Below, piece by piece: positions 1 to 2,200 of a stretch of DNA of 64,000 bases. Where the stretch lies: positions 1 through 64,000 of the IMG/VR virus record IMGVR_UViG_3300026097_000876. One strand, 5' to 3'. The notes under the pieces are model-generated. The model was given only the letters and a program-made list of their open reading frames with translations, ran no database searches and was not told the origin of the DNA. A program made the position numbers and the translations under genes. How positions within the stretch are numbered: position 1 is the first letter of the stretch; each line of letters begins with the position of its first letter.

Positions 1-17
1 TACTAAGAGACCAAAAA

Positions 18-93
<76 letters not shown>

Positions 94-97
94 AATA

Positions 98-172
98 TGG
101 TGGAGGATGGGAGGGTCGAACTCCCGACTTCGCCGTGCAAGGGCAATGTTTTCCCAACTATACTAATCCCCC
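98..172 (-). tRNA. tRNA-Ala(UGC)
   Basis: Anticodon loop CTTGCAC; G3:U70 pair; encoded CCA. Confidence 0.95.
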
Positions 173-176
173 AAAG

Positions 177-260
177 TGGTGGAGAGTGATGGATTCGAAC
201 CACCGCGCAGTTACGACCTGATTTACAGTCAGGTGCTTTCGACCACTCAGCCAACTCTCC
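177..260 (-). tRNA. tRNA-Tyr(GUA)
   Basis: CCTGA-CTGTAAA-TCAGG; long variable arm; CCA. Confidence 0.95.
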
Positions 261-302
261 GCAAACTTGGGACTGTCTTTAAGGCGCAGTCATTCCTTTA
301 AA

Positions 303-379
303 TGGCTCCGGATGAGGGACTCGAACCCCCGCAGACGCGGTTTTGGAGACCGCCGCTCTTCCAACTGAGCTAATCCGGA
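303..379 (-). tRNA. tRNA-Trp(CCA)
   Basis: GCGGT-CTCCAAA-ACCGC; CCA end. Confidence 0.95.
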
Positions 380-385
380 ATAAAA

Positions 386-462
386 TGGTCGGGATTGCTG
401 GATTCGAACCAACGACATCATGCTCCCAAAGCATGCACTCTACCAGACTGAGCTAAACCCCG
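386..462 (-). tRNA. tRNA-Pro(UGG)
   Basis: CATGC-TTTGGGA-GCATG; CCA end. Confidence 0.95.
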
Positions 463-466
463 ATAT

Positions 467-542
467 TGGAGCCACGGACAGGAGTTGCACCTGCATAGTA
501 AGGATTTGCAGTCCTCTGCCTAACTGTTCGAGCCACCGTGGC
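467..542 (-). tRNA. tRNA-Cys(GCA)
   Basis: Anticodon loop CTGCAAA; U73 discriminator; variant T-loop TGCAACT. Confidence 0.9.
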
Positions 543-549
543 GTAAATT

Positions 550-634
550 TGGCGACAGCGTGTAGACGGTGCCTCGCTCCACCGTTTCGTGTCGACCGGG
601 TTACCCCACAGTCCAGATCACTACACTTAACCCA
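550..634 (-). ncRNA. CCA-terminated structured non-tRNA RNA between tRNA-Asn and tRNA-Cys
   Basis: Stems GTGTAG/CTACAC, ACGGTG/CACCGT, GGG-GTAA-CCC; ends GTCGCCA; no T-loop or anticodon arm. Confidence 0.55.
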
Positions 635-640
635 CGAAAG

Positions 641-716
641 TGGCTGCCCGAGCAGGACTCGAACCTGCGACCAAGAGATTAACAGTCTCCTGCTCTACCA
701 ACTGAGCTATCAGGCA
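641..716 (-). tRNA. tRNA-Asn(GUU)
   Basis: GGAGA-CTGTTAA-TCTCT; CCA end. Confidence 0.95.
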
Positions 717-901: not shown

Positions 902-1074
902 AAAACACATTAGAAAGTGTGCTTATTTTTATTGCCCGATAGCCTAGGATTTGGCAGGGTCTGTCTAATGCGTCTACAAGGTAGCTAATCCTCTACGACG
1001 AGCTAGGACACTTACAGTTCACGCTGGGGTTACCACACTGAACTCAACCCTAAGCACACTTTCTAATGTATTTT
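902..1074 (-). ncRNA. ~170-nt structured element closed by a 24-bp stem
   Basis: Inverted repeat AAAATACATTAGAAAGTGTGCTTA / TAAGCACACTTTCTAATGTGTTTT (one G.U); internal AGTTCA/TGAACT stem; no ORF; promoter directly upstream. Confidence 0.55.
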
Positions 1075-1075
1075 C

Positions 1076-1120
1076 TCTAACTGTTATACACAGTATAAAG
1101 TCGTGTTATTGTTTTGTCAA
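1076..1120 (-). promoter_or_regulatory. Sigma70-type early promoter
   Basis: TTGACA-17 nt-TATACT followed by GTGTATAACAGTTAG. Confidence 0.8.
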
Positions 1121-1121
1121 C

Positions 1122-1221
1122 CTTATTATAAAGCACACTACGGAATCGAACCGTTTTTTGTGTTGTAACACCTATCGCCACGACCTAGTAGCTACTATAG
1201 GCTAGTGTGCTTTATAATAAG
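1122..1221 (-). ncRNA. tRNA-like element lacking a canonical anticodon arm and CCA
   Basis: 19-bp closing stem, TA-GCCT...AGGT D-like arm, ACGG-TTCGATT-CCGT T-arm. Confidence 0.55.
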
Positions 1222-1978: not shown

Positions 1979-2200
1979 ACCTTTCCTGGGCACCATTTGC
2001 TCAATTGTTTTACAAGGGGAACAAAACCCTTAAAAATTTTTACACAATGCAAAGAGTGAGTGGTTAACCAATGCATCGACCTAGCTACTTGATAAACTAT
2101 GTCTATCTTTCACTACTTTCAGGCGGTTCAGGCCTTTATCGCCGTCTCCCTAAGGAGCTTGTGTCTAGGTCTTTTTATAGTAGTACCGAATCTACATATT

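What the first reader, a model, noticed from the sequence alone, without database searches (positions are those of the whole stretch)
550..634. CCA-ended non-tRNA RNA with a pseudoknotted 3' end inside the tRNA array
Seen: the spacer between tRNA-Asn and tRNA-Cys is ~90 nt, against 4-7 nt for most other spacers, and it ends in GCCA exactly as the neighbouring tRNAs do. It forms GTGTAG/CTACAC, a GTAA-tetraloop hairpin and ACGGTG/CACCGT. The terminal TGTCGCC can pair with internal GG(T)CGACA, crossing the first stem. There is no TTCG T-loop or anticodon arm. Known: T4 encodes two stable RNAs of unknown function in its tRNA cluster, and plant virus tRNA-like structures use pseudoknotted acceptors. 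Inference: a processed tRNA-mimic, decoy or ribozyme.
Basis: partly seen in the sequence, partly recalled or inferred. Interest (0 to 1): 0.6.

Follow-up and report, generated by a model that had tools for sequence, protein, structure and literature searches.

The report
Orphan GC-rich spacer in phage tRNA array
A 98-base, unusually G+C-rich stretch sits between two tRNA genes of an uncultured aquatic jumbo phage; it may yield a small non-tRNA RNA, but it matches no known RNA family, has no relatives anywhere searched, and its proposed fold is no better than chance by energy.

Summary
The described sequence is real. On the minus strand, a 98-nt spacer (window 543-640) lies between tRNA-Asn and tRNA-Cys.

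Evidence that it is more than junk:
- G+C is 55%, like the tRNAs, and in the top 0.8% of 98-nt windows.
- It has four perfect stems of at least 6 bp (P=0.005 against shuffles).
- It is laid out like an array unit.

Evidence against:
- Folding energy, with or without crossing stems, is ordinary (z -0.2 to -0.8).
- No Rfam family matches on either strand, even at E<=10.
- Strict HDV-like/theta descriptors fail, and the hammerhead core is incomplete.
- There is no similarity to 349 tRNAs.
- No homolog was found. All other copies are 100% identical, so covariation cannot be tested.

Most likely it is a lineage-specific structured spacer RNA, co-transcribed with the tRNAs and released by their processing, comparable to T4 RNAC/RNAD. 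A neutral relic is nearly as likely, and a ribozyme is unlikely.

Related phages carry GOLLD, a manA-like RNA and two unnamed covarying RNA families in their tRNA arrays.

The parts
543..640 (-). The whole 98-nt Asn-to-Cys spacer, which is the element. RNA position i = window 641-i.
   Evidence: G+C is 55%. No promoter or terminator lies inside it.
550..634 (-).
   Evidence: Sequence.
633..639 (-). S1 5' arm UUUCGUG (RNA 2-8). It pairs with 585-591 (CACGAAA, RNA 50-56).
   Evidence: (pair I6).
585..591 (-). S1 3' arm CACGAAA (RNA 50-56).
621..626 (-). S3 5' arm GUGUAG (RNA 15-20). It pairs with 560-565 (CUACAC, RNA 76-81).
560..565 (-). S3 3' arm CUACAC (RNA 76-81).
598..607 (-). GGG-GUAA-CCC hairpin (RNA 34-43, 3 bp). 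Its 3' half can instead pair with GGGUUA at RNA 8-13 (window 628-633), forming S2.
566..585 (-). S4 hairpin ACGGUG-GAGCGAGG-CACCGU (RNA 56-75).
590..597 (-). S5 5' arm GG(U)CGACA (RNA 44-51). It pairs with 551-557 (UGUCGCC, RNA 84-90), which includes both C residues of the CCA.
551..557 (-). S5 3' arm UGUCGCC (RNA 84-90).
543..549 (-). A/U-rich trailer AAUUUAC between the GCCA and tRNA-Cys. It has the same format as the 4-7-nt spacers after the other tRNAs. In the MFE fold it pairs weakly with RNA 6-12.
641..716 (-). tRNA-Asn(GUU), upstream neighbour.
467..542 (-). tRNA-Cys(GCA), downstream neighbour. It is atypical: T-loop UGCAACU and the lowest Rfam score in the array (43.7 bits).
1092..1120 (-). 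Sigma-70-like promoter TTGACA-17-TATACT (11 of 12 matches). It is the nearest promoter upstream of tRNA-Asn and the element on the sense strand.

Best explanation
The element is a lineage-specific, G+C-rich structured spacer RNA that occupies one 'slot' of a phage tRNA array. It is not a tRNA and not a member of any described ribozyme or RNA family.

Proposed mechanism:
1. It is transcribed on the minus strand with tRNA-Asn, tRNA-Cys and the downstream tRNAs, probably from the promoter at 1120-1092. The promoter match is shown; its use is inferred.
2. It is freed by ordinary tRNA maturation. RNase P cuts at the 5' end of tRNA-Cys, and an endonuclease followed by 3' trimming acts after the tRNA-Asn CCA. 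This is inferred from established bacterial tRNA processing.
3. The AAUUUAC tail is trimmed back to the GCCA that abuts the 3' hairpin domain (RNA 44-90), as at tRNA 3' ends (inferred).
4. The result would be an RNA of roughly 85-98 nt, comparable to RNAC and RNAD of the T4 tRNA region. Any function is unproven. The 3' domain is two 6-bp helices around an internal loop, followed by GCCA, so it loosely resembles an acceptor/T-arm minihelix. That makes tRNA-enzyme mimicry the least unlikely specific role.
For: - G+C is 55%, matching the tRNAs (49-62%). The other non-coding parts of the array are 36-43% and the window mean is 40%. The element is in the top 0.8% of 98-nt windows and is the most G+C-rich of 124 spacers from related phages.
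- It has four perfect stems of at least 6 bp, against 0.8 expected (P=0.005).
- It has the format of an array unit: a short C/U-rich leader after the upstream CCA, then GCCA plus a 7-nt A/U-rich trailer.
- It contains no promoter or terminator, and a strong sense-strand promoter lies upstream.
- Related phages carry several genuine non-tRNA RNAs inside their tRNA arrays: GOLLD at 201 bits, a manA-like RNA after an identical tRNA-Asn, Family A with 10 of 20 pairs compensatory, and Family C, a CCA-ended cloverleaf with 9 of 28 pairs compensatory.
- T4 encodes RNAC and RNAD in its tRNA region, of unknown role (PMC3014915, PMC9697503).
Against: - Folding energy is ordinary for its composition (z -0.2 to -0.8). 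tRNAs of the same array average z -1.56.
- No homolog exists in 80 related phage loci, in IMG/VR, in JGI metagenomes, in GTDB genomes or in GenBank phages. Neighbouring non-coding blocks of the same array are conserved at 74-98% identity.
- There is therefore no covariation and no evidence of purifying selection.
- No expression data are available.
Confidence: 0.42

Rival explanations
1. The element is a neutral relic with no function of its own. It could be a scrambled or decayed former array unit, a recombination scar, or a captured G+C-richer fragment. The stems and the CCA would then be coincidental.
For: - It is an orphan sequence, identical in all three samples.
- It is absent from every relative, although other non-coding blocks of the array are conserved.
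- Energy statistics are indistinguishable from shuffles.
- Contigs L108 and L110 have tRNA-Asn directly followed by tRNA-Pro, so the element plus tRNA-Cys looks like a local gain.
- Weak repeats link it to tRNA-Cys: a 13/17 direct repeat and a 10/11 inverted repeat.
- A decayed tRNA-like gene already exists in the same array at 1133-1210.
Against: - There is no significant similarity to any of 349 tRNAs (P=0.92), nor to tRNA-Cys when long gaps are allowed (z 0.2).
- A sequence old enough to have lost all tRNA signal should also have drifted towards the 36-43% G+C of the surrounding non-coding DNA.
- The excess of perfect stems has P=0.005.
- An 18-mer search found no bacterial source.
Confidence: 0.33
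2. The element is a cis-acting part of the tRNA precursor. Alternative pairings would control folding or processing of the neighbouring tRNAs. S1 sequesters the trailer directly after the tRNA-Asn CCA. RNA 65-75 can pair with positions 4-14 of the atypical tRNA-Cys.
For: - S1 starts 1 nt after the tRNA-Asn CCA.
- There is a 10/11 complementarity between the element and the 5' part of tRNA-Cys (pair I2).
- tRNA-Cys has a non-canonical elbow and the lowest tRNA score in the array.
Against: - About 0.3 such 10/11 matches are expected by chance in a 281-nt region (my estimate).
- The 250-nt precursor does not fold better than shuffles (z -0.53).
- There is no comparative support.
Confidence: 0.1
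3. The element is a self-cleaving ribozyme. One version is an aberrant HDV-like fold on the plus (antisense) strand: P1 GGCGACA/UGUCG(A)CC, P2 GUGUAG/CUACAC, P3 ACGGUG/CACCGU with L3 CCUCGCUC, and GG after P1. The other is a hammerhead-like core on the sense strand: UGA...GAAA-stem III-GUC, cutting after RNA C76.
For: - The plus strand has the order P1-P2-P3-P1'-P4-P2'. Its loop matches 7 nt of the genomic HDV L3 as I recall it from memory, and CC/GG is available for P1.1 (relaxed descriptor).
- The sense strand has U4, G5, A6, G12, A13, A14, the A15.1-U16.1 pair and C17 in register (sequence).
- Theta ribozymes sit next to phage tRNAs (PMC10879173).
Against: - No Rfam HDV, hammerhead, twister, pistol or hatchet model hits either strand at E<=10.
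- The strict descriptor gives 0 hits.
- The plus-strand fold needs a 6-bp P3, a 4-nt J3/1 and a bulged P1 that closes with G-C rather than G.U.
- That fold is antisense to the tRNAs, and no plus-strand promoter is predicted upstream of it within the window (1-550).
- The relaxed topology is common: about 170 bins in 128 kb, and tRNA regions also reach 17 bp or more.
- The hammerhead core differs at C3, G8 and A9, and there is no stem II next to the core.
Confidence: 0.05

Closest known systems
RNAC and RNAD (species 2 and 1 RNAs) of the bacteriophage T4 tRNA region
   Same: Both are small non-tRNA RNAs encoded among phage tRNA genes on the same strand, with unknown function (PMC3014915, PMC9697503).
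   Different: There is no detectable sequence similarity to any GenBank phage. Expression and stability of the present element are untested. T4 RNAC has been seen on Northern blots.
Theta (minimal HDV-like) ribozymes next to phage tRNAs
   Same: Both are short structured elements starting within about 1 nt of a phage tRNA 3' end, with crossing helices (PMC10879173).
   Different: Theta ribozymes have G1 closing a G.U pair, a 3-bp P3, L3 of the form U-CC-NCGY, GG directly after P1, and J4/2 CUAA (supplement read). None of these is met on the sense strand. On the antisense strand only the CC/GG feature and part of L3 are met. Only 4.5% of the tRNAs next to theta ribozymes encode CCA; here the tRNAs I checked do.
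   Same: Both are G+C-rich non-tRNA units in tRNA arrays ending in G-CCA plus an A/U-rich trailer. In both, a tetraloop hairpin is followed directly by a long interrupted hairpin that begins GGU and has an 8-nt loop.
   Different: Family C has a covarying 7-bp acceptor stem joining its 5' and 3' ends. The element has none before its GCCA. The Family C covariance model does not hit the element at E<=10.
GOLLD and manA RNAs in phage tRNA islands
   Same: Both are structured RNAs of unknown function placed among phage tRNAs. GOLLD occurs in relatives, and a manA-like RNA follows an identical tRNA-Asn in L114. See also 10.1101/2024.12.08.627333.
   Different: They are much larger (about 180-800 nt), conserved and covarying. 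The element matches neither model.
Pseudoknotted tRNA-like structures of plant viruses (TYMV type), recalled from memory
   Same: Both have a 3' CCA and a proposed pseudoknot involving the 3' end.
   Different: The plant-virus structures have T-arm and anticodon-arm mimics, with an H-type pseudoknot forming the acceptor and a free ACCA. Here the pairing would bury the two C residues of the CCA, and no T-loop or anticodon-arm mimic exists.

Membership tests
tRNA (RF00005) | Cloverleaf with a 7-nt anticodon loop, a T-loop and an acceptor stem joining the 5' and 3' ends | tested here: not met
   ARAGORN finds nothing. Rfam finds nothing at E<=10. There is no similarity to 349 tRNAs or to tRNAs of the same array.
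HDV-like / theta ribozyme | Nested double pseudoknot in the order P1-P2-P3-P1'-(P4)-P2' | tested here: inconclusive
   The order can be drawn on the plus strand, but only with a relaxed descriptor. That relaxed topology is frequent in the window.
HDV-like / theta ribozyme | G1 at the cleavage site closing P1 with a G.U wobble | tested here: not met
   On the plus strand the pair is G551-C597, and A595 is bulged. On the sense strand P1 would start with U.
HDV-like / theta ribozyme | 3-bp P3 with a 7-8-nt L3, joined directly to the P1 3' strand | tested here: not met
   On the plus strand P3 is 6 bp and J3/1 is UUCG. On the sense strand 29 nt lie between P2 and P1'.
HDV-like / theta ribozyme | P1.1: CC in L3 pairing with GG immediately after P1 | tested here: met
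   Met on the plus strand only: C572 and C573 with G598 and G599. The same G residues are needed for the P4 hairpin.
HDV-like / theta ribozyme | Catalytic C opening a 3-5-nt J4/2 (CUAA in theta ribozymes) | tested here: not met
   The strict descriptor, which requires this feature, gives 0 hits on both strands. The plus-strand J4/2 would be 14 nt.
HDV-like / theta ribozyme | Same strand as the tRNA, with the cleavage site at its 3' end | tested here: not met
   The only acceptable fold is antisense to the tRNAs, and no plus-strand promoter is predicted upstream of it within the window (1-550).
Hammerhead ribozyme | Core C3-U4-G5-A6-N7-G8-A9 ... G12-A13-A14 ... H17, with stems I-III | tested here: not met
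   C3, G8 and A9 are replaced by G, C and U, and no stem II adjoins the core (sequence). No Rfam hammerhead hit at E<=10.
Any Rfam 15 family (twister, twister-sister, pistol, hatchet, riboswitches, sRNAs and others) | Covariance-model match | tested here: not met
   The only hit in 535-650 is a 13-bit CRISPR-DR64 chance match at E=5.7.
   No hit in the element at E<=10 with filters off.
   No hit in the element at E<=10 with filters off. nhmmer gives no hit at E<=1.
T4 RNAC/RNAD-type stable RNA in a tRNA cluster | Encoded among tRNA genes on the same strand | tested here: met
T4 RNAC/RNAD-type stable RNA in a tRNA cluster | Accumulates as a discrete stable RNA during infection | not testable with these tools
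   There are no expression data and no cultured host.

The most novel reading that the evidence does not exclude
The element is a new, lineage-specific small RNA. It would be cut out of the tRNA precursor and end in GCCA. Its compact multi-pseudoknot fold would combine S1 and S2 with S3, S4 and a trimmed S5, all of which can coexist. It would present an acceptor-like 3' domain that mimics or titrates a tRNA-handling enzyme such as RNase P, the CCA-adding enzyme or a host tRNA-targeting defence nuclease. Alternatively it would be a previously undescribed self-cleaving motif.
Probability: 0.1. Interest if true: 0.6.

Novelty: new member of a known kind. Interest (0 to 1): 0.25.

Why it matters
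If the element gives a stable RNA, it adds to the poorly understood set of non-tRNA RNAs that phages place inside tRNA clusters, such as T4 RNAC/RNAD, GOLLD, ROOL and theta ribozymes. It would be a small and tractable case for asking whether such RNAs exploit the tRNA-processing machinery.

As it stands it is a single orphan sequence without comparative or expression support, so it does not yet justify a claim. The wider observation may be more useful. This group of aquatic phages packs its tRNA arrays with diverse structured RNAs, including two covarying families that match no Rfam model.

Tried and rejected
**Homolog searches (all negative)**
- Exact 28-, 19- and 19-mers of the element in IMG/VR found only the source phage.
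- A tRNA-Cys anchor found only the source contig in IMG/VR and in JGI metagenomes.
- An 18-mer in GTDB genomes gave 22 chance hits that do not extend.
- blastn against GenBank phages gave only E=3 matches in Clostridium phage coding regions.
- Protein-anchored searches used the 2OG oxygenase, the 106-aa protein encoded within the array and ClpP. They gave about 100 related loci. None contains the element by blastn or nhmmer.
- The other copies found are 99.97-100% identical.
- A tRNA-Asn anchor found eight contigs in which other sequences follow tRNA-Asn.

**Family tests (all negative)**
- Rfam at gathering and at E-value thresholds.
- A strict HDV-like/theta descriptor.
- Covariance models of Family A and Family C.

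**Ideas rejected**
- tRNA relic or tRNA-Cys paralog: no significant alignment.
- Hidden tRNA-His or tRNA-Met, both missing from the array: CUGUGGG looks like a His anticodon loop but has no flanking stem, and there is no CAU.
- Promoter or terminator inside the spacer: none.
- Small ORF: only a 6-codon GUG frame, with no ribosome-binding site I could see by eye.
- A precursor-level structure spanning Asn, the element and Cys: z -0.53.

**Not attempted**
- A covariance model built from the single sequence. It would add little beyond nhmmer.

Full report
**Setting**

The window is the first 64 kb of a 261.8-kb IMG/VR contig. Nearly all long ORFs from 2.4 to about 46.6 kb lie on the minus strand. 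They include ClpP, ribonucleotide reductase and a 2OG-Fe(II) oxygenase. tblastn found no cultured relative for two of its proteins.

Its ClpP is 80-91% identical to those of hundreds of uncultured phage contigs, some carrying Tara labels. All ten tRNAs in the window are on the minus strand. An identical contig (L001) shows the full array: 20 tRNAs for 18 amino acids, with His and Met missing. Of its 19 spacers, 13 are 4-7 nt.

**The observation**

The Asn-to-Cys spacer is window 543-640, 98 nt. It also carries GCCA at RNA 88-91, followed by AAUUUAC and then tRNA-Cys.

Both offer alternatives to the tetraloop hairpin and overlap the terminal pairing.
- The MFE of the full spacer is a cloverleaf-shaped four-way junction closed by a weak G.U/A-U stem (6-12/92-98).

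**Is it more than chance?**

Two measures stand out.

- G+C is 55%. The tRNAs are 49-62%, the other non-coding parts of the array 36-43%, and the window mean 40%. The element is in the top 0.8% of 98-nt windows and is the highest of 124 spacers from related arrays.
- There are four perfect stems of at least 6 bp, against 0.8 in dinucleotide shuffles (P=0.005).

The energy measures are unremarkable.

| Measure | Result |
|---|---|
| MFE z-score | -0.3 to -0.8 |
| Two-step pseudoknot energy z | -0.2 |
| Crossing-allowed stem packing | z -0.6, P=0.28 |
| tRNAs of the same array, mean MFE z | -1.56 |
| Validated neighbour families, MFE z | -0.2 to -5 |

**Known families**

- Rfam 15 gives nothing in the spacer on either strand, even for a 116-nt query at E<=10.
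- I took the theta-ribozyme layout from the supplement of PMC10879173 and wrote a strict HDV-like descriptor. It gives no hit on either strand.
- A relaxed descriptor does fit the plus strand: P1 GGCGACA/UGUCG(A)CC, P2 GUGUAG/CUACAC, P3 ACGGUG/CACCGU and L3 CCUCGCUC. That loop resembles the genomic HDV L3 as I remember it, and GG follows P1.
  - The fit needs a 6-bp P3, a 4-nt J3/1, a bulged P1 closing with G-C, and a 14-nt J4/2.
  - It lies antisense to the tRNAs, and no plus-strand promoter is predicted upstream of it within the window (1-550).
  - Such relaxed topologies are common in the window.
- On the sense strand a hammerhead-like register exists (UGA...GAAA-stem-GUC). However, C3, G8 and A9 differ and stem II is missing.
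- The element has no significant similarity to 349 tRNAs or to tRNA-Cys.

**Relatives**

Every other copy found is 99.97-100% identical, from three samples in all. About 100 related loci were reached through ClpP and other proteins, and none contains it. DNA searches of IMG/VR, JGI metagenomes, GTDB genomes and GenBank phages also found nothing.

Other non-coding blocks of the same array are conserved in relatives at 74-98% identity. The same tRNA-Asn 3' end occurs in eight other contigs with different neighbours. In L108 and L110, tRNA-Pro follows directly. In L114, an identical tRNA-Asn is followed by a manA-like RNA. The element, possibly together with tRNA-Cys, is therefore a lineage-specific occupant of a variable slot. 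Covariation cannot be tested.

**Context that bears on plausibility**

The tRNA arrays of this phage group contain many non-tRNA structured RNAs.

- GOLLD is present at 201 bits.
- A manA-like RNA scores 44 bits, E=4e-10.
- Family A is a 60-70-nt motif upstream of tRNA-Ser with 10 of 20 pairs compensatory.
- Family C is a tRNA-shaped RNA ending in G-CCA. Its 'anticodon arm' is capped by a tetraloop or by a large insert, and 9 of 28 pairs are compensatory.

The element matches neither the Family A nor the Family C model. It does share with Family C a tetraloop hairpin followed directly by a long interrupted hairpin that starts GGU.

**Verdict**

| Explanation | Probability |
|---|---|
| Selected, lineage-specific structured spacer RNA, co-transcribed with the tRNAs, released by their processing, possibly stabilised by its 3' hairpin and GCCA | about 0.4 |
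| Neutral relic or captured fragment | about 0.33 |
| Cis-acting element of the tRNA precursor | about 0.1 |
| Ribozyme | about 0.05 |

All processing steps are inferred from general bacterial tRNA maturation. Only the sequence features and the promoter match are shown.

Noticed in passing
window 1133-1210 (-): A tRNA-like gene that neither ARAGORN nor Rfam calls. It has acceptor GCACACU/AGUGUGC, D-stem CCUA/UAGG and T-arm ACGG-UUCGAUU-CCGU. Its anticodon-like loop is GAUAGGU, with A at position 33. It has an A-rich variable region and no CCA. It is probably a decayed or aberrant tRNA-Leu(UAG)-like copy.
   Followed up: partly
window 907-925 and 1051-1069 (-): A perfect 19-bp inverted repeat (TAAGCACACTTTCTAATGT / ACATTAGAAAGTGTGCTTA) encloses 125 nt. 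It lies just downstream of the promoter at 1120-1092 and upstream of tRNA-Asn. This is a candidate structured RNA with no Rfam match. The motif AAGCACAC recurs in closing stems of inter-tRNA elements in relatives.
   Followed up: partly
window 2042-2168 (-) and L076 13150-13276: A non-coding block after tRNA-Leu is 86% identical to a block in a related phage, where it precedes a Family C RNA. It is likely a conserved ncRNA.
   Followed up: partly
window 1984-2034 (-): A block of about 50 nt (AAGGGTTTTGTTCCCCTT hairpin plus GTAAAACAATTGAGCAAATGGTG) is 94-98% identical in at least four relatives (L030, L034, L063, L066), while its flanks diverge. It lies upstream of a 106-aa protein that, by eye, has a hydrophobic N-terminal signal-like segment.
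   Followed up: partly
window 261-302 (-) and L114 1106-1133: The 42-nt Trp-to-Tyr spacer holds a hairpin (GG-AAU-GACUG...CAGUC-CC) that is 96% identical over 28 nt in another phage, again just upstream of a tRNA. The CCA-like end seen in the window is not conserved there.
   Followed up: partly
window 467-542 (-): tRNA-Cys(GCA) is atypical. Its T-loop is UGCAACU, with G at position 55. Its D-loop has no GG. Its discriminator is U73. It has the lowest Rfam score of the array (43.7 bits).
   Followed up: no
L001 2751-6148: The complete array has 20 tRNAs for 18 amino acids. tRNA-His and every CAU-anticodon tRNA (Met, fMet, Ile2) are absent.
   Followed up: no
L044 12237-12701; L045 13346-13810: GOLLD RNA (RF02032, 201 bits) with an embedded tRNA lies inside the tRNA arrays of related phages.
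   Followed up: partly
L114 918-1097: A manA-like RNA (RF01745; 44.1 bits, below the gathering score of 55.2; E=3.9e-10) directly follows a tRNA-Asn identical to the window's. A tRNA-like gene at 1142-1213 is not called by ARAGORN.
   Followed up: partly
L033 12640-12710, L043 2251-2321, L046 9618-9687, L047 3743-3812, L056 10913-10972, L062 12162-12222, L072 2958-3024, L074 11930-11998: Family A is a 60-70-nt motif between a tRNA and tRNA-Ser with an invariant CUGAUAA. Ten of 20 predicted pairs show compensatory changes, and MFE z is -2.4 to -4.2. Rfam gave no hit at gathering threshold for the one member scanned (L033), and the motif is absent from the window.
   Followed up: partly
L084 16553-16641, L044 16239-16331, L076 13301-13444: Family C is a tRNA-shaped RNA with a covarying 7-bp acceptor stem, a G discriminator and an encoded CCA. 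It has no anticodon loop: that arm ends in a tetraloop or, in L076, a 53-nt insert. Rfam gives no hit at gathering threshold. L059 11832-11927 is another CCA-ended non-tRNA (MFE z -5.1).
   Followed up: partly
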